Of a stretch of DNA of 64,000 bases, positions 33,615 through 61,903 are shown piece after piece; within the stretch, counting starts at the first letter, position 1, and each line of letters starts with the position of its first letter. The notes beneath the pieces are model-generated. The model saw only the letters and a program-made list of their open reading frames with translations, did no database searches and was not told the origin of the DNA. Source of the stretch: Rebecca billardiae RCC1528. Its lineage: Eukaryota > Protista > Haptophyta. The position numbers were made by a program, and so were the translations under genes. Where the stretch lies: NCBI GenBank assembly GCA_965240325.2, contig OZ251225.1, forward strand, positions 930,001 through 994,000, in the 5' to 3' direction.

Positions 33615-33666
33615 CTGCTACAGCTTGCTGACTCTGACGCCTGCCCGTTGCATACCACGTCGTTAA
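33615..33666 (+). mobile_element. About 50-bp 3'-end fragment of the CRE-like retrotransposon, within (TA)n
   Basis: Reverse complement of about 55875-55926. TA repeats on both sides. Confidence 0.85.
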
Positions 33667-33918
33667 TATATATATGATGACGAAAATAAATTGGAACTCG
33701 GTAGTCATCATGATCATCTCCGCCAGGCCGCCTGAAAAGCAGCGCCCTCCGTCCCTTTTTCTTATTGATAATCATCAGCAACTTATTCGAGATCATCGAT
33801 CTTTCTGAATAAACGTCGTGGTCGTGACTCGTGACAGTAGTGCCCGCGCTGCGGGCTCCGCCACGCTCACGCTGCGCGCTCCGCCCCATGCACCGCGCGG
33901 GCCATTATTAGGCCGCCT

Positions 33919-35739
33919 CTAATCAACCGAGCGCAGCCCTCTGAGCGCCTCATCGAGCAGCACCTCGGCGATGCCAGTCGCGCAGTCGTTCACACCGTAC
34001 GAAAAGCGTAGCGCCTCCCTCTTTTCAGAGCTGCTGTAGCTCTTCGAGCGCACATCGCTCCGACCTTGCTTTGCGGCGGTGCGCGGAAGGTGTGCTGGGC
34101 TAATCTGCGTGAGCTCCATGCCGCACACGAACTGGATGCTTTCGCAGTCGTCCGGACGTGACGTCGACGTCTTGAGTGCGGGAAAGCACCACTCGGGACC
34201 AACGCGCCGCACGGCAAAGGGCGGCCGTGCGTCGAGCGTGAGCATCAGCTGCGTGTAGTGGTGGCCCCATAAGGTTGGTTGAGTGCCAGCGAGCTGTGCG
34301 CGAGAGGCAGCGGAGAGATTTGCCACCGAATTGGCCGCTGGCCCCAACGTCATCGTCGACGCGCCAGGTCCGACCTCGTGCCGATGCATCAGCACGAGCA
34401 GCTCGGCGCTGTCTCGCAGAAGGAGCGGCCCGACTGAAAGGTGCAGCCGATGCGAGTACCACTGCTCCAGGTGGGGCGCGCGCGCCGGCACCGCAAAGCG
34501 CCCAACTGCAGTGGCATTGAGGCTGGCAGGAGGCCGCGCAACGCCATCCATGGCGCCGGCAGTCTCGCTCGTTGCACGCGTGGCTGCAGTGGGCATGGCA
34601 AGCTGCTCGGGCCGCACAAGCGGGAGGAGGCGGTGCGGCGGCCCGACATCGGCTGGGCTGAAGCCGAGAAACGCAGGGCCTCCATTGATGGACTGCCCTT
34701 TGACCAGGCTGGCGTTCACGGCGACCATTGCCATCTTGGGGGTCGTCCCTGCGCTCTGACTAAGACCCCACAGCACGTGCATGCGCCCGCGGTACCAGAA
34801 CGGCAGCAGGTTTCGATTCCTTGGGCCTCCTGCCACGCCGAGCGCAGGAGCCAGCTCCTTGGAGACGAACAGGTACCCGCCCAAGCTGTCGGAGAGCAGC
34901 CGCGCGCGCAGGGCACACGTGCCCTCCCGGACGGAAGGTTTTGCGTGGCGCCCGCTGCTCGGTGCGCGCTTTGTGGCGCTCGCGCACTGGAGGTGCAGCG
35001 GCCCGATTGCCATCGTCTCAGCGCCACGCTCGTACCTCTCAAAGGGCTTTCCGCGTTGCTGACACAAGCACGAGGCCCACACCGCACCTGTGCTCGTCCC
35101 CAGGCCGTTGCCGACCTCGCCCCCTGCTGGACCAGGCGGCTCGCGGAGGAGCCGGCAGTCCATGAGAGCGCGGCATCTGTTGATAGACTCCACAGGCCCG
35201 CGCGCCAGCTCACGCATCGACCCGCTGAGCACCGCTACGCCGACCGAAAATCGAGCTCGATGCAGCCCAAAGGGGTCCGCCCAGTCGCTCGAGCCTGCGC
35301 GGCCGGGGTCATTCCTAAGGTCGGCTCGTCTGCACTCGTTGTTGCCCCGTTCGTTGAAGAGCATCACGAAGCGTGCGTCGGGCATACCGAGCTGGAGCCG
35401 CTCCGACGGGAGTAACCGTGCCAGCGGCGAGTTGAACGCGTCGATCAGGTGCTTGCCGCGGGGCGGCTCCGGCTCACGAGCGCCTCGAAGCGTGGGCATC
35501 ACGCGCGGCGCGGTGCAGTCGCTCCCGATGTGCCCGTCCCAAGAGCGATCGCACAGCACAGGCCTGTTCAGCCTCAGCTCGCCAGCGGCAAGCGCTGGAA
35601 CACCAAACATGTACTCGGGCACCCACTCGTGCTGGACTGATGCGCGAGCCGCTGAATTCGCGAGGACGACGAGCTCAAGAGCCATCACCAGAGTCAGCAG
35701 TGGCTGACGACGCAGGCCGTATGTGATGTGAGCGCTCAT
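33919..35739 (-). CDS. Secretory beta-propeller protein (GT91/GH130-like C-terminal motifs), function unknown
   Basis: Hydrophobic N-terminus; MDCRL, RNRNLLPF, LTLDARPPFAV..EWCFP, IQFVCGM, FSYGVNDC. Confidence 0.6.
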   Translation of the reverse strand: MSAHITYGLRRQPLLTLVMALELVVLANSAARASVQHEWVPEYMFGVPALAAGELRLNRPVLCDRSWDGHIGSDCTAPRVMPTLRGAREPEPPRGKHLIDAFNSPLARLLPSERLQLGMPDARFVMLFNERGNNECRRADLRNDPGRAGSSDWADPFGLHRARFSVGVAVLSGSMRELARGPVESINRCRALMDCRLLREPPGPAGGEVGNGLGTSTGAVWASCLCQQRGKPFERYERGAETMAIGPLHLQCASATKRAPSSGRHAKPSVREGTCALRARLLSDSLGGYLFVSKELAPALGVAGGPRNRNLLPFWYRGRMHVLWGLSQSAGTTPKMAMVAVNASLVKGQSINGGPAFLGFSPADVGPPHRLLPLVRPEQLAMPTAATRATSETAGAMDGVARPPASLNATAVGRFAVPARAPHLEQWYSHRLHLSVGPLLLRDSAELLVLMHRHEVGPGASTMTLGPAANSVANLSAASRAQLAGTQPTLWGHHYTQLMLTLDARPPFAVRRVGPEWCFPALKTSTSRPDDCESIQFVCGMELTQISPAHLPRTAAKQGRSDVRSKSYSSSEKREALRFSYGVNDCATGIAEVLLDEALRGLRSVD

Positions 35740-36506
35740 CTCGCTCCTTCGCCTCCACTGGCGAGCCCCACTGGCTCAGGTCGGCTGCAGCCTTATCTAG
35801 GCCGCCTGCAGGCTGCAGCCAAGCATTTTCATCACGCCACCCTTCAAGGCTGTGGAGCCAGGGGCGTTCCCCGCATTGGTCATACGCCAAATTGAACCAC
35901 CTTCCTATTGCAACGAGCTTCCTTCATTTGAAGCGGGTACATTTGAATACGGGAAAAGGCAAAGCCCCCGCAGCGGGGGCTTTGCTTTTCGCGAGCGTGT
36001 GGCAGGATCCCGGGAACCCTTAGGTGGGGGTTTGGTGCGCTGGCTCCGCCGCCATCGAACTTTTTCGAATTTCGAGGCGAGGAGGCTGGTGTGATGAGGA
36101 AAATGATCAGCGATGGCGGCGGCGCGTTGTGCAGCGTTGTCGAGTCTACCAGACAGGCGCCCTCTGAGGGTCGGAGGCGGGGAGGGACGGAGGTTCTGAG
36201 GATGGATGCTCAGCGGCAAGGCGATCGGTCGTAGCCAGTGCGATCTCCGACGACAGCGCACCCGCTACCTCCTGCTGGCGCACGAGCACGTCCTGCATCC
36301 GGCCTTACGCCTTACGGCGTCCGGCCAGCGGTTCATAATAGTGTGCGACACCGCGGTGTAATTTTAAACGCGGAGCGGCGCGACACGCCACGCGCGGCAC
36401 GCGGGCCGGCGACCACTCTCATCATGCCTCAAAGTTATGACTGGCAATCGTCGCACGTCGACCTGTCGCTAGTGTCTGAGACAGAGACTGACGAGTCGGT
36501 CGGTCG

Positions 36507-39500
36507 TCAACTCGCGGGTTTTAAGCTCTGCAGCTCATTGCTCAGCGCGCGCTGCTGCTCCTGCATCGCCTTCTGTTGCTCCTCCATTGCGCGGATCTGC
36601 GCCTCCAGCCGCGCCACTTTGGCCTCCTGCTGCTGCTTCTGCAGCTGCTCATCGCTCTCGCTCTGCGCTGCCCTGGTGGCTGGAGCGGTGTTGCCGGCGG
36701 CAGGCGGCCGAGCGGAAGGCGGCGGCGCGAGCTGCGCCGGGGCAGCGGGGGCTGCGTCCCTGCCCTTCGCGTGGGCGGCGGCGTGTTGCGCGCCTACCGT
36801 CGTCACCTGTGCCGCTGCATCTGGCGGCTGGTAGCCGAAGCCTGCGACACGCGCGCAGCAAGGGTCGCCCAGGCAGTAGGGGACGGGGCAGCCGCGAGGC
36901 ATGAGTGAGTCAGCGGCTGCCGTCGCGTGGTGGCGGCGGCGGGAGCGAGGGGCTTTGCACGCGGCGCGGCCCATCGGCACGAGTACACGACGCGTGGGCG
37001 CACGGGCGCCTGCCACGCGCGCACCGTCGCCAGCCGCCTCCCACTTCACCGCCCACTGCAGCATGGCGCGGTCGCCGCCGCCGACCGACACAACCCTCGC
37101 GTCATCGCCAAGCCAGCACACGTTCTTGACAAACGACGAGTGCCCGTCGTATCGGTGGTACGGCGCGCGGTTGATCACCGCGGGGAAGTTGAACGCGAGC
37201 ACATCGCCGTGGTCGGTCGAGCCCAGGACCACCTGGCCCCTCCGCGCCGGCTTGTCCGGGTCGCGCGGGCCGCCCGTGCCGCGCGAGACGGCGACCACGT
37301 TCATCTTCTCGAGCGCCATGCCCTGCGGGAAGATGCCCATCACCGGGAAGCCGAGGATCGAGCTCCACGTGTCCCACTGCGTGTACTCGCGCTGCGCCTC
37401 GGTGAGCTGCTCGCCCGGCTTGGGCGGCGTCTCGCGCCCCTCCGCCCACAGGTGGAGGTCCCTGAGCTCCTGCTCCGTGCCCGAGCGGCCCCACCAGTAC
37501 AGGTGCTCGTTCGCGGTCGAGTTGGACTGCAGCAGCTTGCCCGTGCGGTCCCAGTCGAGCCGCGTGACCGAGGAGCTGTGCCCGACGCACTTGCCGATGC
37601 GGCGGTACCGCTCGCGCGAGGCGACCGTCGCCTCCGTCCGCGCCAGCTCGGGCGCCACGTCGTACAGGTAGATGAGCTGGTCGTACGAGCCGAGGGCGAG
37701 CGTGCGGCCGGTCGGGCAGTACTTGACGCACGCGATGCCCTGCGATGCGCGGCGCGAGCACGGCGCGGGGCGGGTGGCGCTGGGCTCAGCGCGGCGCGTC
37801 GAACGCGTGACGCGAGCGTGACGCGAGGCGCGCGCGCGCACCTGCTCCTCGAGGATGGGCAGCCCGGTCGCCGAGTTCTTGTTGGACGGCCGACCCGGCG
37901 TGTACTCCTTGGCGTACGCGAGGTGCTGCGTGTTGTACACCTTCCAGCTGCCGGAGGCGAGGCCGATGGCGATCTCGTCGCCCGAGGGCGAGTACGCGAT
38001 GCACGTGGCCTGCTCGTTCTCGATCGAGCGCGTGAGCGTCGGCCTGCGCTGCCGCGCGTCCCACACGAACCACCGCCCCGAGTAGCACGCGGTCGCGTAC
38101 TCGTCCGGCCGCACCGGGTTGGGCGCGACCGCGTCCAGCCGGTCCGAGTGGCCGACCACGACCGGCTCGGGGTCGTTGTCGACCTCGTAGATGTCTGACT
38201 GCGTGGTGCCGACCACGTAAATGTCCGAGCCTGGGTAGCAGTCGAGCGCCTTGATGCCGGGGAGCCGCGGGTCCGGGTCCGCGTGCGGCGGCGCAATCGT
38301 GCGCCGCGAGATGGGCTGGGGCGTGGCGCCCTGCACGTTCCACTCGATGATGGTGCCGTTGAGCGAGCCGCTCAGCAGGCGCGTGCCGTCGGCGCGCAGC
38401 GTGAGCACCGAGAGCGCCGTCTTGTGCGCCTGGCTGTGCCACACGTACTGGGTGTCGCGCCACAGCCAGATCTCGCCCTCCTTCGTGCCGCTCACGCAGT
38501 CGCCATTTGGCAGCCACACGGCGCACTTGTGATGCGAGAGCGAGGGCAGGTCGCCCGTGCCCGTCCTCACCTTGTAGTCGGGCTGGTTGGCGCCCAGGTC
38601 TGTGAAGGTGCCGATCTTCTGCATCTTTGCGCGGTTGTACCGCGCGCTGCCGTCCTTCACCACCTTGGGCAGCTTCCAGAACGAGAGCCACTTCACGCCG
38701 TACGTGCAGAAGTCGTACTTCTGCACCTCCTTGTTCGGGTCGGCGCGCACGTGGTTGTTCCACGAGATGCCAAAGATCATCGGGATGCCGCCGGGCGCGG
38801 GGCCCTTGAGCGACTTGTCCTCCATCAGCTTGGTGGCTGTCGACCAGTGCCACACCGAGATGTGGTGGTCGATGTCGCGCTGGATGCACACGAGCAGCGA
38901 GCCGTCGTGCGAGAACGAGAGCGCCGTCACCGCCGGGTCGCCCTCGTGCTTCTTCAGGTTGAGCCGCTGCAGCTGCTGCATCGAGTTGGCGTCCCAGACG
39001 CACACGAACGGCGGCGCCGCGCCCTTGGACTTCACCTGGCCGGTCGCGACGATCGTCCTGGTCGGGTCGATCGCGAGCGAGACGATGTCGTCGGTGTGCC
39101 CGACGAAGAAGCGCTGCGCCTTCGCCTCCTTGTTGAACACCACACCCACGCCCGCCGTGAAGTACACGATCTCCTTGCTCGCCGTGTAGAAGAGGTTGGG
39201 CGAGGTGACCGCGTCGTCCGCGCGGTACCCGTACGCGTACTCGAGCTCGAGCTTGGCGTCAGGCGGCAGCTTGGACCGCTCGGCGGTCTGCGGGCAGGGC
39301 AGGGGTGCGCGGGGCGCGGCGCGTGGTCAGAGGCTCGCGCGCGGGCACCGATGCCAGCCTCGCCACGGGCGCCCGCGGCGGGCTGCGCGGCCGAACGCGC
39401 GCGCGCCCGGGCAGGACGGGCGCGCGCTGCGTGTGGCGCGCCGCGCCGCGCCGCGCCGCGCCGCGCCGCGCCGCGCACCTCGGCGTCCCAGTCCAGCGGC

Positions 39501-40234
39501 GTGTAGATGGAGGCGAAGGGCGTCTTGTCCACCTTGAACTTGCCGTTGAAAGCGAGCGCGTCGCGACCGCCGTGCCCGCTGAACGCGCCCTTGTGCTGCT
39601 CCGTCCACGCGAGCAGCCGGTTCTGCGAGGTGAAGAGCCGGTTGGTGAACACGTCGTACGGCATCAGCCGGCGCATGTCCTGCCCGTACTTGTCAAACAT
39701 GTACACGACCTCGAGCTCGTCGACGTGCACGCCGAGCGTCTTGAGCGCCTTGCGGAAGCCGTCGCGCGAGATCTTGCCCGTGCCCTCGTAGTCGAAGCAC
39801 TCGAACGTGCGCACCAGGATCGACTTCTCCGTCTCGTGCAAGCCCTCGCGCCGCGCCAGCTCGCGCAGGTTCTTCCGCAGGTCGATCTCGACGCGCTGGA
39901 TCTTGTCGTTGAGCAGCGGCGTCGAGGGGACCAGCGCGCCACCAGTCGACCGGTTCCGATCGGTCAGCGCGCCGCTGCGCCGCCCGGCGAGCGCGCCGCC
40001 ACCGCCGCCGCCACCGCCGCCGGTGGCCACCACATCCTTGCGCGCGAGCACCAGCTTGGTCTGCGCCGGCTCGTCGAGCCGCATGCCCGGGATGTACTTG
40101 TTGGGCACGCCGTGCACCTTGGAGGACCAGAGCGGCGGCCGGCTCGTCTTCAGCTTGGCAGGCACCGTGCGCTCGGCCATCTTCAACGGCCTCTCACGTG
40201 CGGGGCGGCCGCCGCCGCCAGCGTTGTCCACCAT
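36507..40234 (-). CDS. EMAP/EML-family WD40 microtubule-associated protein with an N-terminal EF-hand; introns 39288-39478, 37740-37841, 36842-37024
   Basis: EF-hand FDYEGTGKISRDGF. HELP-like LELEYAYGYR..YFTAGVGVV..QRFFVGHTDDI. Also GHSSSVTRLDW, WDTWSSILGFPVMGIF, YDGHSSFVKNVCW, SVGGGDRAMLQW. C-terminal coiled coil. Confidence 0.9.
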
Positions 40235-40985
40235 GCTGTCGCGTTCAAGCAGCCGTTAAAACCCGCCTGGCCTGATGCCGCTGCGAGAATAAAATATGCG
40301 CGCCACCCAATAAATACAAATTGCTGCTCCGCCCTTTATTCCTTTGCTCCGGGGAGGCAAGACCAAGACCGCGCACACTCGGCGCTCGGCGCACAGTCCG
40401 CACACCGACCGGCCAGGGCGACCACATCCACTATATTTGCACTACGGCATCAACTTGAACAGCCTCGGACCGACGCGGGCAACTACATGATGACCAAGGC
40501 CTGCGACGATTGCAAATACAGCGGCATCCCTGGGCACCCACCTAACCCACTACCTCCGTGTGATCAGCATTGGCGACAGACTCTGACTCTCTCAGTCTCA
40601 CCCACGGGCACGGCCAACGCGCTCCGCGGACATCCTCCGTCTCCTGATCAGTACTTCGACACGACGAATCACGAATCACTAATCAGGAGAGCTGCGCCCT
40701 CGTGCCTAAGTAGTCTTTAAATCATAGAATTAGTCAAGCGCCGCGCGGCATGATACGTCGTTGGCCGAGTGGGTCGTGCCACTCGTGGCCCCGTGTCAGG
40801 ACGTGACTCACAGTCACTACACTCAGTCTCAGGAGTCAGGTGTCTGGTAACTAGTTAAGTGGCGGTAGTAGTAGTAATAATAATTAAAGCCCGCGTATAG
40901 TAATGATCGGCTACGCCGATCTTCGGGTAGTGAACAACGAAGTTGGGGGCGCACGGCCCTAGTGGCTAGTGCTCAGAGTCACCGA

Positions 40986-42288
40986 TCACGCAGCTTGTGA
41001 ATGTGAGCAGCAGCCGCGGCTTGTGACGACACGGTCGGACGGTCGGACGGTGCCGGTGCGGCGGGGGCAGCGGCGGCGCGACGGCGTCGGCGGTGGCGCG
41101 CTCGCACAGCGTCCTGCAGCACGTAAGCGCAGCGTGACTGCGTGTGCAGCAGCGCGCCGCTCAGCTCCCGCCGCTCCACGCCGCCGCAGCGGCGCGCGCG
41201 GCGCGCGCCCGCTTCGGCCGCGGCCGCGCCCGCCACCGTCCGTCGCGCCGCCGCCAGCTGCTGCGCCGTCGGTGACGGCGGCGGGTCGAGTGCGGAGAGG
41301 AGGTGGATGAGCCAGTGCAGCCCGGACTGCGTGACGTCCACGTCCACCACCGCGTCCTCCTTCGCCACCGCCATCTCCTCCGCCCGCCCCGCCCCCCAGC
41401 GGCGGTCCCACCACCCAGGCGGCGACCGGCCCGGCGCGCGCTGCGGGCGCCCGCGCGCCGCCGCTGCCGTCGGCGGCGGCGATCGCGGCGGCGAGCGGCG
41501 ATCGCGGCAGCCCGTCGGGCGGCGGCGGCGGCGCGCCGCCGCCCTCCGCTCCGCCCTCCGACGCCGCCCTCCGACGCCGCCCTCCGACGCCGCCCTCCGA
41601 CGCCGCCCTCCGACGCCGCCCTCCGACGCCGCCGCCTCCGATCCGCCCCGCCGCCGCCGGGCGACTGCGCTCGGATGACGAACCGGCTGGGCGGCAGCGA
41701 CCAGCCGCGTGGGCGGCGTGACGCGACGCGCTCTCCGCCGCTGACGGAGGAGTTGACGGAGGTCGTGCGCGCGAGGTCGGCGGCGGTGTGCGCGGCGGCG
41801 CTGGGCGAGTGCGCCAGCCTCTCGGGCAGCACATGCCCCGCCGCGCGCCCGCCGCCGCCCAGGCTCCCGCGCTCGGCCTCGCGCCGCACCGCCGCGCGGT
41901 CCGAGTGCAGACGCCTGTCGACCGGATAGGTCAGATTTGCGACGCAGCCTGCGGAGAGGGTGGCGCATGCGGCGGGCTCGGCGGGGTCGAGCGCGCAGTG
42001 CGCGATCACCTCGAGCAGCAGCTGCGCCACCCCGTACGCGCGCAGCATCGGCGCGTCCGGTCGCATCACCCGTGCAGTCCGGTCGCCAGCAAGCCGCGGA
42101 GCCGCGGCGGCGGCGGCACGCGGGCGGCCGCCGCCGGCGAGGGTGAGGACGGACATGCCATTCGGCGCACCTCCCTCGACTGCGCCGCCACCATCGCCCT
42201 CGCTCCCTTCAGCCGCCTCCCCCGACGCCTCCGCCTCCGCCTCCGCCGCACCGACGCCGCCGCACCCGTGCCGTTGGATCGTCGTCAC
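40986..42288 (-). CDS. Hypothetical protein; frame interrupted around a 13-bp minisatellite (intron or pseudogene)
   Basis: Coding-like segments VMRPDAPMLRAYGVAQLLLEVIAHCALD and SGLHWLIHLLSALD..LLHTQSRCAYVLQDAV lie in different frames. Confidence 0.35.
41551..41628 (+). repeat. Minisatellite (CCGCCCTCCGACG) x6
   Basis: Six perfect 13-bp units with degenerate flanking units. Confidence 0.92.
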
Positions 42289-42338
42289 CGAGCCGTCACG
42301 CGCAACTTTCCGTGCCGATCATCATTATTGATCAGAGT

Positions 42339-43129
42339 CTGTCCAGGACAGCGTATTGATGGTGCAAGAAAACCTAGAGCCCCGACCGTTACACGGGTAT
42401 ATTAGGTCTCAGCGGCATGATGGGCATCCGGCGAATAAGTCATTCTGGGTCTCCCTGACACCATGATACAGGCCCAACACCTTCAGGGACCTGAGCATCA
42501 CCCTGGGACCTAATATTGCAGTCTGAAGTTGGGTGGGTCACTCTCGACGACGGCACGGCGGACGGTCGTGATGCACGCGGGACAGCACATCAGGGGCATT
42601 CGGTGCACTAGCGAGGGTGGCATACGATGTCATCCCAACGTATGCATCCGTAGTATACTTGCCCGGCCCCAGGCGCCCTGTCATCCGGCACAATGTCACG
42701 TGCGCGGGCTTCACGCGGTCGTGATCGCGGGGTTCAACATGCTGTTCCGAACGAGCGCACGCACGCGCGCCGGCGCGAGGCTAGCGAGAGGAATGCACCC
42801 CTCGCGTGCTCGCGCGGGCAAACGCACTTCGAGAGCATCCCACAGGCGCCAAGAACTTCCTCCGATGGCGATGCGCAAGCCGCTAGCCCCCACAAGCGCG
42901 GGGCGAACCACGCCGCAGGGCGGTGTCGCCGCTTCCCGCGCTGGGCCGGGGCTCTAGGTTTTCTTGCAACGTCAATACACCCATTTGAATCAGAGAGCTC
43001 TTATTGATCGCAGATAGAGCACAAACGCGTCGATTCATACCCGCATTGGCTTTGAATCAGTTGGCAATACGGGGTGAGGAATCTTGAATCCCGTGATTAT
43101 TGACCTTTCCGCTCAGGCTGTCCAGGACA
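42339..43129. mobile_element. Putative non-autonomous element: 37-bp inverted repeats (42351-42387 / 42944-42980) inside 12-bp direct repeats CTGTCCAGGACA
   Basis: IR GYGTATTGAYGKTGCAAGAAAACCTAGAGCCCCGRCC with 4 mismatches. DRs at 42339-42350 and 43118-43129. Confidence 0.6.
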
Positions 43130-43787
43130 CACTCACCACACTATTCTAGCGCAGTTCTCTTAAGAGAAGAGGGATGCGTCTAATCTAAAACGCTGTTTTT
43201 CAGAAGCGCGTGAATCAAAGCTGACGACCCAACCTATCGTTTCTATGCGGTTGGCGAGCTGTTTCAGGCTCTTACAATTCAGGCATCTTACTATGACGGA
43301 ATGTTCTAACACACGGCTGGTGTTATGTGCTATTCCACCCTGCATTCCCCTAAGTGTTACTATCGTTAAAATTAGCATCTACTACAAACGCAATCATTGC
43401 GGCAGCGATATCCACTCATACGCGGTGGCCACCTACCGAAAAATCCCCAAAATCCTGCGCGCATCCTCTTTTTGATTTTGCGGAGCACGTGCGCCGCCCC
43501 CCCCCGGCTTTCGCTCACGCTCAGACCTTTCGGGGGGGGGCCGTGCGCCATAACTAACGTCTTCAATGGTGACGAAGACTTCCGGACGGTCTCGCCTCTA
43601 GGATGACGAGCATGGCTCGGAAGTGTCACTCGCAACGACATCACATGCGCATATATATATATATATATATATATCGTCAGTATTCGCGCGCAGACCGAGT
43701 CACGTATTCAACGGCGTGCGCGGCCCGCGATGTGCCGCAACTGACGACGTCGCTGGCGGGGCCATAAGCTCGGCGTGAGCTGCGTAC

Positions 43788-43872
43788 AGTTTACTAAGAA
43801 TAAGAGACGCACACAGCTCAGGCAGGCGAGATTGACGCCCGCCAACTGTCACCGCCCATGAAGCCGTCGCCG
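43788..43872 (-). repeat. 85-bp dispersed repeat (copy of 6320-6404)
   Basis: Identical reverse complement. Confidence 0.9.
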
Positions 43873-44051
43873 CCGTCGCAGTAGCCTGCAGTGACTGTAG
43901 CCGGCGGTCCGCGCGCGGCCGGCGGCGGCCGGCCCGCGGCGATGAGGGAGCAGCGCAGAGCTCTGCCAGTGACTCGAGCGCGCGCGCGCATCCGCCCCGA
44001 GCGTGTTCGGGCACCGTGCTCAATTCCCAGCGAGAGCCGAGAGCCTCCCCC

Positions 44052-51074: not shown

Positions 51075-51341
51075 ATGCGCGGGGGCCGCGCACAACTCAT
51101 CAACACGCGCAGGTGGTGTGGACCGGCGGCGATGGCCGTGCTGATGTCCGCTGCATGGCGCCCCTGCGCCGCGTTGCGCTCGTCGGTCGTCCTTCCGTGG
51201 CGAGCAGCGAGTGCGCGGGCCGGTGCCGCGCGGATGCAGATGAACGAGCCGCCAGCATCGACCAATTTTGTCCGCAATATCGTGCTCGACGACCTTGAGA
51301 GCGGGAAGCACTCGCAGCTCGTCACTCGCTTCCCGCCCGAA

Positions 51342-51374
<33 letters not shown>

Positions 51375-52973: not shown

Positions 52974-53655
52974 TGATGTTTGGATGATGCGAACTCCGGT
53001 GTGCTGCTGCATGAGCGTCGCGCAAGTGAGATACTGTCATAGCGCGAGTCAGTTCTCACACGGTGGTGATGATCAATATGTAGCTACCGCCCACGGGTGG
53101 GAAATGAATCAAAATGTTTACTGCGTATATATGGCTCGGACTGATGAATGACAGCGCATAATTCATCAGCAATGATCTGATATACAGTATATATAAGTAT
53201 ATATGCTGCTCCGCGCTTGATCCCGTGCCGCATCCGACGACTCGATAGCTATATATGATGTATATATATATAGTCGTTGATTAATAATTGAGTAGTGTAT
53301 TTTATTAAACGTACGGTCCGTGAGACTAGTCTGTTCGCATTCGCGTGCCTTCATCAGAATGCGAATCATCAGATGGCAATTCTCATAAGATGGCAGATGC
53401 AACAGGCTGAGGCTGAGCACTCTGAATGAAGTCTGAGAGCGGAGTGAGAGCCGGCAGCGGCGCCGGCGTAGCCGGTCGGCGTAGCCGGGACTCGCCACTC
53501 GGCGACTCACGGACTCACGGTCACGGACTGCCACCGGACTCCGGAGTCAGTACTCGGAGCTGTAGCGGATCGGTCAGCTAGTTATATGGACAGACCAGAT
53601 GACTACTGATTTTTATTATGGTCTGACACAATTGAAACAAACCGAATAATAATAA

Positions 53656-53661
<6 letters not shown>

Positions 53662-53696
<35 letters not shown>

Positions 53697-53810
53697 CGTC
53701 GTCGTGTAACTAGCGGCGGTAAGCGGAGTATAACCGTACTGCAGTCTGCATGCGCATGCTGCGCCGTACAGCGGTCGGACAGAATCCCTCAATCCGCGCA
53801 CTCTTCGGAG

Positions 53811-53862
<52 letters not shown>
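53662..53862. repeat. Two long (TA)n tracts bracketing a 120-bp unique insert (53695-53814)
   Basis: Read directly from the sequence. Confidence 0.85.
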
Positions 53863-53865
<3 letters not shown>

Positions 53866-54116
53866 AGCCTGAATAAAAATCGTCCCGACGAAATATTATT
53901 AGCGCTGTACGGTTTTGTGCTGGCCCAGTCTCGCCGCGTCGTTGTCAGTCTTGTCAGAGACCGGGCGGCCCGGGAGCTTACTGCCCCCCGCCCGACTGAG
54001 CCCGAGCCTGCGCCGTCTGGCGACTCTGGCGTTTGCGCCAGCAGGCCCGTGTGTCCCCAGCGGATAGGCGCGGGCAGAGTGACTGCTACCAGCAATGCGA
54101 GCTCGAACGCGGGCGC

Positions 54117-54977
54117 TCAGAGGCCGTTCCCACTGCGCACGGCCACCAGCTCGATGTCGGCGATGAGGGACTCATCGTAGCGCCGCAGCATGCGCCTACG
54201 CGAGGCAAAGTTGGAAGGGCTGGGCTGCAGATCTGCAGCAAAGCAGGCGTCGTTCTCTTGGACGCGGGTAGTCGGCACAAGCGCCACGTCGGTGATGGTG
54301 GTGAGGCACTGAGCGTCGGGAAGCTTCCAGCCGCGCTCCGGCCGCACGTTGATCCGACGCCGCCCGCCGGGCTTCATGCCCCGGAGCGCCGCATCCAGCG
54401 CCGGCGCCACGCGCCCGCTGCCAATGGCGAGGTCGAAGGTGTCGCCGACCTTGTCGTCGTCTTCACCGTAGCCCACGCTGAAGATGGACGAGCCCTCACC
54501 CGAGAGCCCATCGCGTGAGCGCTTGCCCTGCCTGAGCACCCGATACCGGATACTGGCGACCGTATTCTCGCGCACCTCCTCACCGCCACTCCCACCCGGG
54601 GTGATGTCATAATAACGGTCGCCTTCAGGTGTGCGCTTGATAGAAGCGGCGTCCACCTCCTCGAAGAGGGTCGCTTCGCGCGCTTCGCCGAGCTCACGGC
54701 ACTCATCGACGGAGGAGCACGCCTGCCGCTCGCGCTTCGCGCCCTTGACCGGCGGGGTTGAGCCCTTGATAAGCGCACCGGCAGGCAAGCCGCCGGCAAT
54801 CAGCGCGCTGCCAACGGTGATGCTGGCGAGCCTTGCGACTGCGACGCGGCGCGGAGCGTCGGCGTTTGCGGAGGCCCGAGGAGCGGCACGCTGACAGCTG
54901 GCACTGGGCAGAGCCCGGTGCACAGGTGGGGCAAAGGCTGCAGCGAAAAGGAAGCCGAGGAGACCGGCCGACGGCAT
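54117..54977 (-). CDS. Thylakoid-lumen FKBP-type peptidyl-prolyl isomerase
   Basis: Signal peptide + AAAFAP plastid motif, twin-Arg PRR + hydrophobic stretch + AGA. FKBP motifs YYDITPGG, ALDAALRGMKPGGRRRINVRPERGW, LIADIELV. Confidence 0.85.
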   Translation of the reverse strand: MPSAGLLGFLFAAAFAPPVHRALPSASCQRAAPRASANADAPRRVAVARLASITVGSALIAGGLPAGALIKGSTPPVKGAKRERQACSSVDECRELGEAREATLFEEVDAASIKRTPEGDRYYDITPGGSGGEEVRENTVASIRYRVLRQGKRSRDGLSGEGSSIFSVGYGEDDDKVGDTFDLAIGSGRVAPALDAALRGMKPGGRRRINVRPERGWKLPDAQCLTTITDVALVPTTRVQENDACFAADLQPSPSNFASRRRMLRRYDESLIADIELVAVRSGNGL

Positions 54978-55083
54978 CGTAATTGCTAAACGCGCTCGGG
55001 CCGCGCTCGTGAGCAGCGGCCGAAGTTTCCCGCGGCCGCGCGCGCTCCGGACCAAGACGGGGTTGGGATTCCCGGTGGCCGCG

Positions 55084-55521
55084 ATGACGGCGCACCGCGC
55101 AACGCTGCTCGCTGCCCTCCTCGCGTGCCTCGGCGCCGCGGATGGGCTCGCCGCGTTCGTGCCGCCGAGCAGCCGAGTCCATACCCCATGCCGCACCGTG
55201 CGCGTCGCATCCCCCACGCTGATGTCTACACCCGACGAGCCGCCACCCGACGCTGTCGAGCCGAGCCCCGTGGAGCCGAGCATCGCTGACGCCACGGCGC
55301 CCACCAGCGCACCTGCCCCGAAGGAGCCAATCTGTGGCACGTGTGATGGGAGTGGCCGCATTGAGGGTGGGTGGGGCACGATTCCGGGCCTCAAATGGGT
55401 CAGCACCACCTTCGGCCTCCGTGCCTACCGCCCATGCCCAGAGTGTGCGCGTGCTGGGCGACGGTACAAACGCGTCGGGCAGAACCTGGACGAGATCTAT
55501 TTCGGGGGGCTCAAGGACTAA
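55084..55521 (+). CDS. Plastid-targeted DnaJ-type zinc-finger protein
   Basis: Signal peptide + AAFVP; CGTCDGSG..GG..PG..W..AYRPCPEC..YKRVGQNLDEI. Confidence 0.75.
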   Translation: MTAHRATLLAALLACLGAADGLAAFVPPSSRVHTPCRTVRVASPTLMSTPDEPPPDAVEPSPVEPSIADATAPTSAPAPKEPICGTCDGSGRIEGGWGTIPGLKWVSTTFGLRAYRPCPECARAGRRYKRVGQNLDEIYFGGLKD

Positions 55522-55874
55522 ATGTAAGCGACCCGCACGCGCACTAGGCCAACAGCTCTACGACCCCACTTGCTTGCGTGCCGTGGCGAAGCCCGAAAGA
55601 CCCTTAGCAATACAAACTGACTGTGTCGACATTCCGTGACCGTCACACCGCTGCCGAGTCTGACGCTGACGCTGTCGCTTGTCGGCCACGGTGTGCACCA
55701 GTGCCAGTGGCACGATTCGTATAATAACGCGCGGATCACTGTTCGATCAATGCTTAAAAGTCTTACTGAGACAGTGTCGGTGAATCAAGTGAAAAGTCTT
55801 CATGGCCCGCGGTACTGTATCATAATCTGCATCAAACTTATTAGTTATTCAAAGAACATTATAATATATATATA

Positions 55875-56373
55875 TTAACGACGTGGTATGCAACGGGCAG
55901 GCGTCAGAGTCAGCAAGCTGTAGCAGCAGATCGAGCAGCAGAGACAAACACCAGGATCAGCGCTCCTCGCCGTCGTCCCCCCCCCCTCGTAGTCGCCCAT
56001 CACTCCATCGCCGAGCGGAAGCTCGAGTCTCGACGCACCGTCTGGCGTCGACGCGCGCGCGCCACCGCGGTGGTCGCGGTGCCACGCGTCGTCAGCCGTC
56101 GTCTCGAAGTAGTCGTCGTATGCAGCGCCCCCGCGGGCGCGTGCCCCCGGGCGCACGTGCGCCATGCGCGCGCGGGCGATGAGCATCTTGGCCTGGCCAC
56201 GCAGGCAGCGCATGCCCCAGCTCGCGCCGCATGGTGCCGAGCAGCGCGCGCTCGGCGGCGGGGCGCGAGGGCGCGCTGAGGCGCGCGCGCCACGTGTCCC
56301 GCCCCATCTTGGCGATCTTCTTGAGGGTGAGGTCCACCTCCGCGCTCCACTCGCCAAACGCCCCCACGACAAT
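55875..56373 (-). mobile_element. 5'-truncated RLE-type (CRE-like) non-LTR retrotransposon copy in (TA)n
   Basis: Near-identical to 61373-61864. Encodes IVVGAFGEWSAEV.. with a frameshift. (TA)n on both sides. Confidence 0.8.
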
Positions 56374-56745
56374 ATATATATATATAATTAATTAAAAAGG
56401 CACCGTACTAGCATTATTTACGCGGGCCCGATATTTTCCTGTCAGTTCATTAATTCAAGTCCGGCTGCAGGCAGCACCAGCCGTCGGCAGCCGTCGCAAC
56501 GCTTTGGCACCCCGACGACTTGCCGCGGCGACCGCACGCATTGCTTGCAGCCGCCGCTGCGGCAAGTCGTCCATCCTCCAAGCACGCGGCGGCAGCGTCT
56601 GAGCGCGCATGCCGTTAATTAACACCAGCGGCAGCAAGCACCCACTGCGCCGCTCGTGAAGCGTGCGGCGGCGTCCGTCGCGGGTGGCGCGGCCGCGCGC
56701 CGTGCCGCGCCCGCGCCGCCCGCCGCCGCGCTCGGCGCCGCGCGC

Positions 56746-57741
56746 CTACTCCGTCTCGAACTTCTTCGGCGTCTGCAGCTGGAAGAGGCAGCAGAAGCCG
56801 TTGATGAAGATGATGAGCAGCAGCCCGCCAACCAGCAGGCCCATGAGGATGTCCGGCGTGAGCGGGATCTGCCTCATCTGCGTGTCGGCGTAGTTGAGGC
56901 GTCGGCGGTTTGACGCGCCGCCCATCTTGGGCGCGAACTCGAGCACCAGGTCCGACGGCACCGTCTTGTTGGCGGTGAGCACCGCCGCGTACCGGCCGGC
57001 CGTCGCCTCGTCCACGAGCTGGACGAGGTCGACGATGCGCTGGTCGTTCTCCTCCGACGGGCTGCCCACGTTGATGAGCACGAGCTCGCTCTCGCCGTTC
57101 GAGAGCATGCCCGAAGACTCCAGGTACGACGCCGCCTGCGAGCAGCAGACGCGGTGGCTCGTCGCGGGGCCGGCGGCGAGCGAGCTCTCGGCGAGCACGT
57201 ACGGCACCTCGAGCGAGGAGGGCGCGCCGGCGAGCATCGACTTGAAGCGCGAGAACTCGGGCGCGCGCGACACGAGATCCGAGCGCATCTGATCATACGC
57301 GAAGGCGAGCACCACCTCGGGCGACTCCTTGGGCGCGCGCATCAGCGGCATCGTCGCCTCGCGCTCCAGGCCCATCAGACGGTCCGCCGCATCCCACACC
57401 GCCGACGCCGGCACGTAGTCAGTGATGACATGGGTGTCGAAGATCGGCTGTCCGGCCCAGAAGTACGCCGGCACGGTCTGCAGCAGGCGCTCCTGCGCGC
57501 GTAGAGAGGCCGGGGAGGGCGCGGCACGCGGGACGCGCAGGGTGCGGCCGGCAGCCATTGCCAAATGAGGTTCGTTGCGATGCGCTCGCGCCGCTCCGCG
57601 CTCGGCTGTGAGGGTGGCGTGCTGGCGGGGACCGGGCCGGTCGCGTGGCTACGACCGCGCGGGGTGGTAAGCACGGCTGCGCACCTGCGCCGACGCCGCC
57701 CCCACCACCGCCGACGCGACAAGCAGCCGAGCACCGAGCAT
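56746..57741 (-). CDS. V-ATPase accessory subunit Ac45/Voa1 (ATP6AP1)-like; exons 57741-57685, 57492-56746
   Basis: Signal peptide MLGARLLVASAVVGAASAQ; C-terminal TM LTPDILMGLLVGGLLLIIFINGFCCLFQLQTPKKFE. Confidence 0.8.
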
Positions 57742-58042
57742 GAGTCCTCTGCTTGCACCTCCTCTCGGCGCACTGAGGCTGCTGTGCCGAAGGCTCGGCC
57801 CGCACTGACCACGCCCGCTTCATCGGGGGCAGGAGGCACCGGACCACGAGATGCACGGCCGCCTGCACCCGGATTCGAGCTGGGACAAGATCCGGACGCT
57901 GCGTCCGTACCTTACCCGGCGCCCTCGCTTGCTCGGTCGTCAGGGGAGCCCAAAGAGGGAGCCGAGCAGGCGTGAGGGCTGACACAGGGGCTGGCGGACG
58001 AGAAGCGCTCGTAACTGGGGAGACCGCCGCCGCCCCTCGCCC

Positions 58043-61033
58043 ATGAGCGTCGAGCCTGCCCCGCCGAGCCTGAGGATGTCTCTCGGACAGGCGCTGATCT
58101 CGCAGCGCCAGGCCGAGGTGTGCGCGCGCTGCGCGGGTGCGCTCACGGACCCCTGGAGGCCCGGTCGATGGCCGCCGCGGCTGACGCCCCGGGGCGCCCG
58201 CCATGCGCGTGCAGGACCTCAACCTCAAGCTTGCGGAGGGTGCGGACGACTCGGGCGGGTGGATCCTGATCCCAGCGAGCGATTCACGCGGGCCCCAGGT
58301 CAACGTGGTCACTCGCAAGGTGCGTGGCCACCGGGCGTAAGCCGCGGCTGTGCCCACGCGTGCTCCCACGGGTGCAGTGGCTCACGCGGCCCGCCTCGTG
58401 CGCACCGATGCGGTGCGCGCGTGCAGGTGGTGATCGGGACGCCACCCGCCCCTCTCGGCGTGGGCGCGGCGGGCCGAGGGAGCACAGCCATGTACCCATC
58501 GGCAGGGGCGCCGCGCACATCGTCGACACCGATGTTGCCGGGAGCGGGCGGCGCAGGCGTTCGCGATGCGAACGGCATCAAGCCGCTGCCGCCGTCGGTG
58601 CGCAGCGCGGCGCGCGCGCCCAGGACCGCGCGCCGCGCGCACCGCGCACCGCTCCGCGCCGCCTGCCGGCGCTCACGCGCTCGCGCCCCACACGGCCTCA
58701 CGGCGGGCGGGCGGGCGGCCACCACGCGCAGCGTAAGCGCGCAGACGGGGGCGGGAGCGATGGCGCCGCGGCGAAGCGGCCAAAGCCTGCGGGCAAGGGG
58801 AAAGGCGCGCTCTCGAGCCTGGAGCACAAAGAGTGCCTCAAGATCGTCGACCAGCTCATCGCCCACCCCAAGTCGTATTGGTTCCGCGAGCCGGTGAATC
58901 CGCTCCAGCTGCCGGACTACCACACAATTATTCAGCAGCCCATGGACCTGGGCACCGTCAAGGTGCGCGGCCGGGCGAAGCGCGGGCGGCGCGGCGGTGG
59001 GCGGCGCGAGGGGGACGCCGACGCCCGCGCCGCCCGCGCTCACCGGGCCCTGCACGCGCGCGCGCGCGCGCCCGCTCGGCTGCGCCGCGCGCAGCGCAAG
59101 CTGATCGGAGGCGAGTACACGAGTGTCACGGCGTTCGCGGACGAAATGCAGCTCATCTTCGCGAACTGCAAGACGTACAACGCGCCGGGCACGGACCCGT
59201 ACAAGAAGGGCGAGGACCTCGAGACCATGTTCGACAAGCGCTTCACCGCGCTCGAGAAGAAGCTCGAGGAGCGAGCCGCCGCGGGCGGCGGCAGCAGCGG
59301 CGGCAGCGGGGCGCGCCGCCCGAGCGGCGCCAAGGGCGCGCAGGGCGACATGATGGCGCAGATGCAGCAGATGATGGCGGCGGGCAACCCGATGGCCATG
59401 ATGATGCAGCAGATGATGGGCTCGAACCCGATGGCCGCGATGAACCCCATGGCCATGATGAACCCGATGATGTGGATGGGCATGATGGGCGGCCAGGGCG
59501 GTGCTGCCGCGGGCGGCGCCGATCAGATGCAGATGATGCAGCAGATGATGGCGCAGATGCAGCAGATGGCGGCGGGCGGCGGCGCGGGCGGCGGGGCTGG
59601 CGGGGGCATGCCCATGCCGTCCGCCGCGCAGCCCAACGGCGGCAGCGCGAAGGCGGCCGGCGGCAAGGCGGCCGCGCCGAAGCCCGCGCCCGCCCAGCGC
59701 GGGCCGATGTCCTTTGATGAGATGCGCCAGCTGACCGTGCAGATCGGCAAGCTCAAAGCCAACCAGGTGGCGAAGGTGGCGGACATCATCCGCCGGGAGT
59801 CGCCGCACCTGATCGCGCAGGGCGACGAGGTCAAGCTCGACCTCGACACGCTCGAGCCGCCCACGCTGTGGAAGCTCCACGACTACGTGAGCACGTGCAA
59901 GGGCGTGAATGCGAAGAAGAAGGCCGCGCCCGTCTCCTCCGACCAGCGCCTCGAGGCCGCCAAGGCGAAGGCGGCGGCGAGCAGGCAGAAGATCTCGGAG
60001 ATCAGCAAGCGCGCGGGCGGCAGCGCGCCCTACGTCGACCCACTCATGCCCCGCCCCGGCGCCGCGCCGACGAGCACGTCGAGGGGGACGGGCTCGCGCA
60101 AAGGTGCGCGCGCCCGCGCCGCGGGTCTGCTCCGCGCCGCGCGCCACGCGCCGCGCCCTCGGCGCCTCGCGCGCCGCGCCGCTGCAGCCAGCCGGTGGGT
60201 GCGCTCACACCGCGCACCGCGCACCGCCCCCTCGGCGCCCGCAGCTCCGGCCTTCGCGCCGCCCGCGCCGATGCCCTCGATGCCCTCGAAGAGCGCCTCG
60301 AGGACGGGCCCGTCCAAGTCGGTGGGGATGCCGGCCGGCGCCGCCGCGGCCGACGACTCGTCGAGCGATTCGTCCGACGGCGGCGCGCCCGCGCCCAAGG
60401 CGCCGCTGCTCGGCACGGGGGCGCTCCCCATGCCGATCGGCCGCGGCAAGACGGCGGCGAGCAGCGGCGGCACGGCGGGCGGGCTGCTCGGCAAGGCGCC
60501 GCTCCCGAACAAAGCCGCCTGGTCCAACCTCGCTCGGCCACAGGGCGCGCCGGCGCTCCCTGGCGGTCCGTCCAAGGCGTGGGGCCAGGCCGTGGCGGCG
60601 CGCCAGGCGACTGTTGCTCAGAAGGAGCAGGTGTGAGGCGAGCGAGCGCGGCGCGCGCGCCCGGCCGCCTGGCCGCCGCGCCGAGCACGCACGCACCGTG
60701 CCGCGCACCCCGGGCCTCAAGCGATGACCGCCGCCCCCGGCCGGCCGGCGCGTGCACGCACGGCGGCGGCGCCAGGCCGCCCTCACCCAGGCGCAGGCGG
60801 CGCGAGAGCGCGAGGCGGCCGCGGCGCGGCTCAAGGAGCAGCAGGAGCAGGACGCGGCGAAGGCGCGCGAGGAGGCCGAGACGGCCGAGCGCAAGAAGCT
60901 CGAGGAGCGCGAGGCCGCGCGCGCCAAGGCGCGCGCCGAGCGCGAGCAGATGTCGGGCATCAACATGTCTGAGCAGGCCTCGGTGATGCAGGCCTTCCAG
61001 GCGGGCTCGTTCGATGACCTGATGACGACGTGA
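58043..61033 (+). CDS. BET/GTE-family bromodomain protein (single bromodomain + ET domain + C-terminal motif), multi-exon
   Basis: YWFREPVNP..PDYHTIIQQPMDLGTVK|RKL..QLIFANCKTYN after removing intron 58963-59094. ET domain PMSFDEMRQL..LDLDTLEPPTLWKLHDYV. Terminal INMSEQASVMQAFQ. The 5' exons are less certain. Confidence 0.88.
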
Positions 61034-61372
61034 GCGATGGCGGCTGGCGGTCCTGCTATTCGCGGCACCACCCGGGCAGCTGGCTTGTGGATTTCAACGG
61101 CAAGGTCTCAAGCATGGACGGCGCTCTGCGCCGAGGGGGAAAACTGGGGGCGGGGAAAGCTGCTGCACGTGCGCGCGCCCCGCCCATCAAGCAACACACA
61201 CACTTTGCCTGCCGAGGGTGGCCGCGGATCCTCAGACCCTTCTTTCTGTGGTCGGACTGGGAGTCCGAGAGTCTGTCGGCGCCATAAGACATCACCATCG
61301 ACGTCGTCGTTCATTCGTCATCATTGCCATGATTAAATTAAATACGACTTATAATATATATATATATATATA

Positions 61373-61885
61373 TTAACGACGTGGTATGCAACGGGCAGGC
61401 GTCAGAGTCAGCACTAGCTGTAGCAGCAGATCGAGCAGCAGAGACAAACACCAGGATCAGCGCTCCTCGCCGTCGTCCCCCCCCCCTCGTAGTCGCCCAT
61501 CACTCCATCGCCGAGCGGAAGCTCGACGCACCGTCTGGCGTCGACGCGCGCGCGCCACCGCGGTGGTCGCGGTGCCACGCGTCGTCAGCCGTCGTCTCGA
61601 AGTAGTCGTCGTATGCAGCGCCCCCGCGGGCGCGTGCCCCCGGGCGCACGTGCGCCATGCGCGCGCGGGCGATGAGCATCTTGGCCTGGCCACGCAGGCA
61701 GCGCATGCCCAGCTCGCGCCGCATGGTGCCGAGCAGCGCGCGCTCGGCGGCGGGGCGCGAGGGCGCGCTGAGGCGCGCGCGCCACGTGTCCCGCCCCATC
61801 TTGGCGATCTTCTTGAGGGTGAGGTCCACCTCCGCGCTCCACTCGCCAAACGCCCCCACGACAATCGGGACGATCGCGGGGAAGG
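61373..61885 (-). mobile_element. 5'-truncated RLE-type (CRE-like) non-LTR retrotransposon copy in (TA)n
   Basis: Open frame FPAIVPIVVGAFGEWSAEVDLTLKKIAK..RRELGMRCLRGQAKML. Same 3' end as the other copies. (TA)n on both sides. Confidence 0.82.
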
Positions 61886-61903
61886 TATATATATATATAT
61901 GAT

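What the first reader, a model, noticed from the sequence alone, without database searches (positions are those of the whole stretch)
33615..61885. (TA)n-microsatellite-targeting CRE-like retrotransposon: three 5'-truncated insertions with an identical 3' end
Seen: copies at 33615-33666 (+, about 50 bp), 55875-56373 (-, about 500 bp) and 61373-61885 (-, about 510 bp). All end ...CCCGTTGCATACCACGTCGTTA, have different 5' ends, lack a poly(A) tail, and are flanked on both sides by (TA)n in a very GC-rich genome. The two long copies differ only by small indels. Established: PIVVGAFGEWS...L..IA...R.L...LRG.A.ML matches the C-terminal part of the restriction-like endonuclease of early-branching non-LTR elements (CRE/R2/R4 type). 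These are often site-specific and are 5'-truncated by target-primed reverse transcription. Inference: a young, sequence-specific retrotransposon that uses TA repeats as a safe-harbour target, with its TTA 3' end possibly pairing with the nicked target. It is a candidate new site-specific integration system.
Basis: partly seen in the sequence, partly recalled or inferred. Interest (0 to 1): 0.8.

Follow-up and report, generated by a model that had tools for sequence, protein, structure and literature searches.

The report
LINE retrotransposon targeting TA repeats
The window holds three dead, front-truncated fragments of a young jumping gene (a non-LTR retrotransposon with an R2-like nuclease) that inserts mostly into short TA-repeat tracts of this very GC-rich genome, a target I did not find reported for this class of element.

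Summary
Three copies (51, 498 and 513 bp) share the exact 3' end ...CCCGTTGCATACCACGTCGTTA, have different 5' ends and no poly(A), and sit in (TA)n.

They are fragments of a 4,694-bp element with one 1,518-aa ORF. At least six loci keep the frame open; the two ORFs I read in full are identical.

The protein has a divergent LINE-type reverse transcriptase. Its best solved-structure matches are R2 proteins. The C-terminal domain is a PD-(D/E)xK nuclease that superposes on the R2 linker and endonuclease at Z 12-14, against Z 6.6 for the next fold.

It lacks the CCHC knuckle and has G-H/A-D-D where LINEs have F/Y-A-D-D.

The 22-nt tail occurs 398 times in the genome, and 74% are followed by ATAT. 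TA runs cover 0.47% of the window. Of 39 copies with both junctions resolved, 36 have TA at the 3' side and 29 at the 5' side. Four independent target duplications of 7-14 bp begin with ATAT.

So this is a microsatellite-specific RLE LINE working by target-primed reverse transcription.

"CRE-like" could not be tested because I had no reference sequences.

The scan had already found this family on other DNA of the same genome (s1-353078, s1-357922).

The parts
33615..33665 (+). Copy 1: 51-bp 3'-terminal fragment of the LINE (element positions 4644-4694), 100% identical to a full-length copy
33607..33614 (.). (AT)4 at the 5' junction of copy 1
33666..33675 (.). (AT)5 at the 3' junction of copy 1
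55876..56373 (-). Copy 2: 498-bp 5'-truncated fragment (element positions 4207-4694). It encodes only the last ~120 codons (the part of the nuclease domain after beta-4, with frame-breaking indels) plus the 122-nt 3' UTR
55864..55875 (.). (TA)6 abutting the 3' end of copy 2
56374..56386 (.). (TA)n abutting the 5' end of copy 2
61374..61886 (-). Copy 3: 513-bp 5'-truncated fragment (element positions 4186-4694)
61354..61373 (.). (TA)10 abutting the 3' end of copy 3
61887..61900 (.). (TA)7 abutting the 5' end of copy 3. The same run is shared with the end of an unrelated inverted-repeat element

Best explanation
The three sequences are dead, 5'-truncated copies of a recently active 4.7-kb non-LTR retrotransposon.

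Shown:
- A single 1,518-aa protein carries a LINE-type reverse transcriptase and a C-terminal R2-like PD-(D/E)xK nuclease. The conserved residues are R-H-D 1264-66, E1287, D1318 and E1331-x-K1333.
- Copies share one 3' end and are truncated at scattered 5' positions.
- Most copies lie in (TA)n.
- Target duplications of 7-14 bp start with ATAT.

Inferred mechanism:
- The ribonucleoprotein recognises TA-repeat DNA.
- The nuclease nicks one strand inside the run or at its edge.
- The freed 3' end (...TATA) primes reverse transcription at the RNA 3' end ...CGUCGUUA. A TA microhomology or read-through TA repeats may help.
- Reverse transcription often aborts, which gives the 5' truncation.
- The second strand is cut 4-14 bp downstream, often still inside the palindromic TA run.

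A ~1.2-kb non-coding repeat carries the same last ~38 nt and also sits in TA runs. This suggests the 3' end is the signal the enzyme recognises, and that this repeat is moved in trans.
For: Copies and ends:
- The exact tail occurs 398 times in the genome, against 0 for the reversed-pattern control. 295 are followed by ATAT and 178 by ATATATAT.
- TA runs of 3 or more units make up 0.47% of the window.
- Of 39 distinct copies with both junctions resolved, 36 have (TA)>=2 within 10 nt on the 3' side, 29 on the 5' side and 28 on both. Their 5' ends are scattered from element position 2784 to 4671.
- Five copies have duplications with 3 or more non-TA bases: 14, 13, 12, 12 and 7 bp. Two are tandem insertions sharing one duplication, so four are independent. 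Shuffled flank pairs gave a mean of 0.16 and a maximum of 2.

Full-length element:
- It is 4,694 bp, and its 1,518-aa ORF is identical at two loci.
- At least six loci have open frames of 1,522 or more codons.

Protein:
- A profile of the family against PDB sequences hits the RT of R2Tg (E 6e-7), then LINE-1 ORF2p (E 2e-3).
- The 918-residue model matches R2 proteins over 790-860 alignment columns (E 8e-12).
- The C-terminal domain model (pLDDT 91) aligns with R2Tg 948-1163 and R2Bm 889-1107 at Z 12.3-14.4. The next fold is influenza PA endonuclease at Z 6.6.
- The catalytic D and E-x-K are invariant or nearly so in 49 sequences.

Non-coding partner.
Against: - About a quarter of exact tails are not followed by ATAT. 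In my sample a few copies have no TA at one or both junctions (L010, L044, L048, L024), so specificity is a strong preference rather than a rule.
- No empty sites or polymorphic insertions were examined.
- No part of the protein could be assigned to TA recognition. The N-terminal 600 residues have no family, structure or atlas match.
- The 3' UTR shows no unusual RNA structure (z +1.4).
- Other unrelated element classes in this genome are also reported in TA runs (earlier notes, not tested by me). Some property of TA tracts themselves may therefore contribute.
Confidence: 0.85

Rival explanations
1. The (TA)n is the element's own microsatellite-like 3' tail, made by the reverse transcriptase, and not the target. 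Insertion sites would then be essentially unselected.
For: Every copy is followed on its 3' side by a TA run of variable length. Several LINE clades are known to end in simple repeats (my own knowledge).
Against: 5' junctions of copies truncated at many different positions also abut TA (29 of 39). Target duplications contain ATATAT plus unique downstream sequence on both sides (L040, L042, L008), so the TA was there before insertion. A few copies end ...TCGTTA directly against non-TA DNA (L037, L044).
Confidence: 0.03
2. There is no sequence-specific targeting. The element has only a loose taste for AT-rich or easily melted DNA, or insertions elsewhere are removed by selection. In a 68% GC, gene-dense genome the surviving copies then end up in TA tracts.
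For: The genome is about 68% GC with AT-rich intergenic islands. Earlier notes of this scan report unrelated element classes in TA runs too (s1-353006, s1-357914; not tested by me). Some copies are flanked by AT-rich non-repeat DNA (L010, L048).
Against: The junction is phase-specific...GTTA|ATAT in 74% of 398 tails. TA runs are under 0.5% of sequence, although AT-rich intergenic DNA is much more abundant. Many copies are 100% identical to the full-length copy and only 24-60 bp long, so there has been little time and little reason for selection to sort them.
Confidence: 0.08
3. Insertion does not use the nuclease. Long TA repeats form cruciforms or break spontaneously, and the element's cDNA is captured at those breaks.
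For: TA repeats are palindromic and known to be fragile (my own knowledge). Some junctions lack a detectable duplication.
Against: Many targets are only 2-4 TA units, too short for cruciforms: 117 of 295 TA-flanked tails have fewer than 4 units. Staggered duplications of 12-14 bp are present. The nuclease catalytic residues are kept in intact copies and across 49 relatives.
Confidence: 0.04

Closest known systems
R2 (28S rDNA-specific non-LTR retrotransposon; solved structures R2Bm 8gh6, R2Tg 9dou/9nl3, R2Pm 9nl2)
   Same: Single ORF. RT followed by a linker and a C-terminal PD-(D/E)xK nuclease. It is the best sequence and fold match for both RT and nuclease. An R-H motif sits on helix 1 of the nuclease. 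There is no poly(A). It is site-specific and uses target-primed reverse transcription.
   Different: - No CCHC knuckle between RT and nuclease.
- A canonical E-x-K lysine on beta-3, whereas R2 places the lysine on helix 2 (PMC4838377).
- GAFGE.S after beta-4 instead of R2's RG.W.
- No recognisable N-terminal zinc finger or Myb domain.
- Motif C is G-H/A-D-D rather than F-A-D-D.
- The target is (TA)n, not 28S rDNA.
- Duplications of up to 12-14 bp.
Microsatellite-specific LINEs: Dong (TAA)n, Togen (TG)n, some HERO families (nuclease of RLE type); Kibi (TC)n, Koshi (TTC)n, Mino (AC)n, Waldo (ACAY)n
   Same: A LINE that inserts into one kind of simple repeat, with the repeat on both sides of truncated copies (PMC4640811, PMC3812793).
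   Different: (TA)n is not among the LINE targets listed in those papers. TA microsatellites are listed only for Micron MITEs, which are DNA transposons of rice (PMC3812793). TA is the only palindromic dinucleotide repeat among these targets, so both strands offer the same site.
CRE clade
   Same: An early-branching type of LINE with a C-terminal restriction-like nuclease and site-specific insertion.
   Different: Those elements target spliced-leader genes (my own knowledge). Clade membership is defined by RT phylogeny, which I could not run. No sequence-level link to CRE was obtained here.

Membership tests
Non-LTR (LINE) retrotransposon | Reverse transcriptase of the LINE type | tested here: met
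   Weak Pfam RVT_1 match (E 0.014). The family profile hits the RT of R2Tg (E 6e-7) and LINE-1 ORF2p (E 2e-3). By Foldseek, R2 comes first, then LINE-1, then group II intron RTs.
Non-LTR (LINE) retrotransposon | Common 3' end, variable 5' truncation, target-site duplication, no terminal repeats | tested here: met
   5' ends are scattered over element positions 2784-4671. Duplications are 7-14 bp. No LTR or TIR was seen in the full-length copies.
RLE-bearing LINEs (R2, R4, NeSL, CRE, HERO group) | C-terminal PD-(D/E)xK restriction-like endonuclease after the RT, and no APE domain | tested here: met
   The domain model (pLDDT 91) aligns with the R2 C-terminal regions at Z 12.3-14.4 over about 200 residues. 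D1318 and E1331-x-K1333 are conserved. There is no Exo_endo_phos hit.
RLE-bearing LINEs (R2, R4, NeSL, CRE, HERO group) | CCHC cysteine-histidine motif between RT and nuclease | tested here: not met
   Only one conserved Cys (C1219) lies in residues 1190-1265. The consensus of 49 relatives shows LGLPSP.C ... VD.YGD in its place.
R2 clade | N-terminal zinc finger and/or Myb DNA-binding domains; insertion in 28S rDNA | tested here: not met
   No Pfam, PDB or atlas match for residues 1-600. The N-terminal region was not folded. Targets are TA runs.
CRE clade | RT groups with CRE1/SLACS/CZAR in a phylogeny | not testable with these tools
Only R2 and LINE-1 could be compared, through PDB.
Microsatellite-specific LINEs | One repeat type flanks most copies at both junctions, far above its genomic frequency | tested here: met
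   ATAT follows 74% of 398 tails. 28 of 39 copies have TA on both sides. TA runs cover 0.47% of the window.

The most novel reading that the evidence does not exclude
This family would be a separate, deep lineage of nuclease-bearing LINEs, common in algae and plankton metagenomes. It lost the zinc knuckle and the aromatic residue of the RT active site, and some members carry an N-terminal RNase H.

Its choice of a palindromic TA repeat would serve three purposes at once: a harmless landing site, complementarity for priming (and for 5' joining) on either strand, and a TATA-like promoter directly upstream of an element that has almost no 5' UTR (about 15 nt).
Probability: 0.3. Interest if true: 0.7.

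Novelty: new variant of a known kind. Interest (0 to 1): 0.55.

Why it matters
Site-specific nuclease-bearing LINEs such as R2 are being developed as tools to write DNA into chosen sites. They are also thought to reflect the early state of LINE evolution.

This element adds a target type (TA dinucleotide repeats) that I did not find reported for LINEs. Its nuclease module works without the CCHC motif found in R2. The family has hundreds of unnamed relatives in environmental data.

Intact copies and hundreds of near-identical insertions exist in one genome. Target recognition, priming and second-strand cleavage can therefore be tested directly on a very simple DNA substrate.

The element also explains part of why TA tracts in this genome are nests of mobile elements.

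Tried and rejected
- Pfam on the full protein gave only a sub-threshold RVT_1 hit.
- Sequence searches against PDB with the single protein, and with the nuclease-domain profile, gave nothing useful.
- The metagenome scan for related loci with alignment A1 confirmed no relative, so I could not check whether relatives elsewhere also sit in TA runs.
The unbiased flank sample is therefore 23 tails from contig C1, not the planned 60.
- Folding the 3' UTR showed no structure beyond shuffles.
- The atlas search of the N-terminal 270 residues gave nothing.
- The gap-pattern count double-counts on the reverse strand. Only its forward-strand figure is usable: 143 of 188.
- I considered Penelope-like, tyrosine-recombinase and LTR elements. 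I rejected them because the RT and nuclease match R2, copies are 5'-truncated and there are no terminal repeats.
Natural copies were used throughout.
Full report
**Observation.** The 22-nt string CCCGTTGCATACCACGTCGTTA occurs three times in the window, at 33644-33665 (+), 55876-55897 (-) and 61374-61395 (-). None is expected in 100 shuffles. Reading the sequence shows each copy ends ...TCGTTA and is followed at once by (AT)n. Each also has (TA)n directly upstream of a different 5' end. Against a full-length genomic copy, the three are element positions 4644-4694 (51 bp, 100%), 4207-4694 (498 bp, 97.4%) and 4186-4694 (513 bp, 98.6%).

**The genome and the family.** The window is part of a 72-Mb, 41-contig, roughly 68% GC eukaryotic assembly. 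The 499-bp copy finds hundreds of candidates in the genome. 41 were scored, at 97-100% identity. The exact tail occurs 398 times (188 forward, 210 reverse), and 0 times for the reversed-pattern control.

**Full-length element.** Two loci that extend furthest upstream (L031, L032) align over about 4.78 kb at 99.6%. Both begin TAATGGCCGACTAGG after a TA-rich tract and end ...CGTCGTTA before (TA)n. That gives a 4,694-bp element with a 5' UTR of about 15 nt, one ORF of 1,518 codons and a 122-nt 3' UTR.
- The two ORFs are identical.
- A genome search with the C-terminal domain finds at least six loci whose open frame is 1,522 or more codons. One of them, at C7:161944, corresponds to an earlier report of this scan.
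- A third full-length copy, L049, is 99.98% identical.
- The exact 5' end is uncertain by some 10-30 nt, because two of the three copies share ...TATATGCG upstream of TAATGG.

**Protein.** Pfam gives only a sub-threshold RVT_1 hit at residues 668-876. The word-based search found five relatives covering RT and C-terminus at 30-46% identity, all from metagenomes.
- Their alignment shows LINE-like RT motifs: D737-x-x-NAFN, GVQQGS, and G835-H-D-D. The others have G-A-D-D or C-M-D-D.
- A profile of this alignment hits only retrotransposon RTs in the PDB. R2Tg is first (E 6e-7), then LINE-1 ORF2p (E 2e-3). The alignment places G835 where R2 has the F of FADD.
- An AlphaFold model of residues 601-1518 (pLDDT 62) matches R2 proteins over 790-860 columns (E 8e-12 to 1e-8), ahead of LINE-1 ORF2p at 1e-5.

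**The nuclease.** Scoring residues 1190-1480 against every representative found 478 clusters at E <= 1e-3.
- Where the proteins are long, the domain is at the C-terminal end, behind a divergent RVT_1. Two relatives, P0004 and P0089, also have an N-terminal RNase H.
- With 49 sequences the domain folds confidently (pLDDT 91, pTM 0.88). The order is helix, strand, strand, strand, helix, strand.
- Invariant or nearly invariant residues are H1265 (in R-H-D on helix 1), E1287, D1318 just before strand 2, K1333 of E1331-x-K on strand 3, and G-x-F-G-E-x-S directly after strand 4.
- The seven best Foldseek hits are all R2 proteins. Re-alignment gives Z 12.3-14.4 over about 200 residues against R2Tg 948-1163, R2Pm 900-1114 and R2Bm 889-1107. 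The next tier is influenza PA endonuclease, another PD-(D/E)xK enzyme, at Z 6.6.
- PMC4838377 describes the R2 module as CCHC, an RH motif on helix 1, PD, D/E, K..KY on helix 2 and RG.W after strand 4.
- This family keeps RH and PD. It has the canonical ExK lysine on strand 3, GAFGE.S in the place of RG.W, and no CCHC. Residues 1190-1265 hold a single conserved cysteine.
Its assignment to the C-terminal part of a restriction-like nuclease is therefore right.

**Target.**
- Of the 398 exact tails, 295 (74%) are followed by ATAT and 178 (45%) by ATATATAT.
- TA runs of three or more units cover 0.47% of the window, including the runs that flank the insertions.
- I resolved both junctions in 39 distinct family copies. 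They come from 30 loci chosen by similarity plus an unselected sample of 23 tails on contig C1.
- 36 have (TA)>=2 within 10 nt of the 3' end, 29 within 10 nt of the 5' end, and 28 on both sides. Their 5' ends lie anywhere from element position 2784 to 4671, and many copies are only 24-60 bp long.
- The 5' junction of a truncated copy cannot come from an element tail. The TA must therefore be target.
- Five copies carry duplications that contain unique sequence: ATATATGTGTGTGT (14 bp), ATATATGAGTGAC (13), ATATATTACGTC (12, twice, in tandem insertions at one site) and ATATGTA (7). Shuffled pairs of flanks gave a mean of 0.16 such cases and at most 2.
- In each case the duplication starts with ATAT at the element's 3' junction. 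The first nick therefore lies at or inside the TA run and the second 7-14 bp downstream.
- Where the run is long, both junctions are TA and the duplication cannot be measured. In several short-run cases the duplication is just the TA run, 4-7 bp.
- Head-to-head and tandem insertions in one run are common.
- The preference is not absolute. L010, L024, L044 and L048 have no TA at one or both junctions, and about a quarter of tails lack ATAT.

**Mechanism.**
- Shown: the domain set; a constant 3' end with scattered 5' truncations; TA at both junctions; and staggered duplications.
- Inferred from what is established for R2 and other LINEs (target-primed reverse transcription): the nuclease nicks one strand in the TA run. 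The exposed 3' end primes cDNA synthesis at the RNA 3' end. Synthesis often stops early. The second strand is then cut a few to 14 bp away.
- TA repeats read the same on both strands, so one specificity could serve both cuts.
- The junction ...GTTA|ATAT allows a two-base TA microhomology, or read-through TA repeats on the RNA, to help priming. This is compatible with the data but not shown.
- I found no candidate DNA-binding domain. Residues 1-600 include an RGG-rich stretch and a basic KRRR patch, but match nothing.
- The 3' UTR has no unusual fold.

**A likely non-autonomous partner.** Five of the 23 tails sampled on C1 belong to different sequence. It shares only the last ~38 nt (92%) with the LINE. 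Two copies, L035 and L038, are ~1.2 kb and 99.4% alike. They contain 180-bp internal tandem repeats, have no similarity to the LINE protein, and start and end in TA runs. This is the pattern of a parasite that borrows a LINE's 3' recognition signal. It also means the count of 398 tails covers more than one family.

**Comparison with what is known.**
- Microsatellite-specific LINEs are well documented: Dong (TAA)n, Togen (TG)n, some HERO families, Kibi (TC)n, Koshi (TTC)n, Mino (AC)n and Waldo (ACAY)n (PMC4640811, PMC3812793).
- In the papers I could search, TA microsatellites appear as a target only for Micron MITEs of rice (PMC3812793). Five full-text searches found no TA-specific LINE. This is absence within the held library only.
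- The element is thus a known kind of thing, with a new target and a nuclease module lacking the CCHC motif described for R2.
- I could not run an RT phylogeny with reference clades, so "CRE-like" stays untested.

**Limits.**
- The metagenome scan confirmed no relatives.
- For these reasons I could not check target conservation in relatives or take a larger unbiased flank sample.
- No empty sites were examined.

**Earlier reports.** The scan had already reported this family from other DNA of the same genome (s1-353078, s1-357922). My reading was formed before I saw those notes. I re-derived the GHDD and no-CCHC statements from my own alignments.

**Verdict.** The CRE label is unproven and the predicted CCHC is absent. 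The window itself holds only dead fragments; intact copies lie elsewhere in the genome.

Noticed in passing
window 61900-63866: A ~1.97-kb element with inverted ends of roughly 60 bp (...GGATGGCGGTCAAGGGA.TTTGCTGGTGCGCTATCCTCAGAAAAGTTTA). Its left end abuts the same TA run as LINE copy 3. The terminal 26-mer occurs 71 times in the genome, often as inverted pairs 1,945 bp apart. The same end also flanks LINE copies in L026-L028. It looks like another TA-associated mobile element, of unknown class.
   Followed up: partly
L035:3850-5022, L038 (reverse strand), L042, L036, L052: A ~1.2-kb non-coding repeat with internal 180-bp tandem repeats. It shares only the last ~38 nt with the LINE and also lies in TA runs. 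It is probably a non-autonomous partner mobilised through the shared 3' end.
   Followed up: partly
proteins P0004 and P0089 (metagenome relatives): Two relatives of the LINE protein carry an RNase H domain at the N-terminus, ahead of the RT. From my own knowledge this is not where LINE RNase H domains usually sit.
   Followed up: no
L031:5181-5195 (-), L032, L049: Full-length copies have only about 15 nt between the upstream TA-rich tract and the start codon. The flanking TA run could act as a TATA-like promoter. Two of the three copies share ...TATATGCG just upstream, so the true 5' end is uncertain.
   Followed up: no
L015, L027 5' junctions: Two copies have an extra GG between the TA flank and the truncated element, possibly untemplated bases added at the 5' junction.
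   Followed up: no
window 53126-53862: A cluster of eight TA runs within about 740 bp, up to 48 bp long, with no copy of this LINE. I did not examine it for other elements.
   Followed up: no
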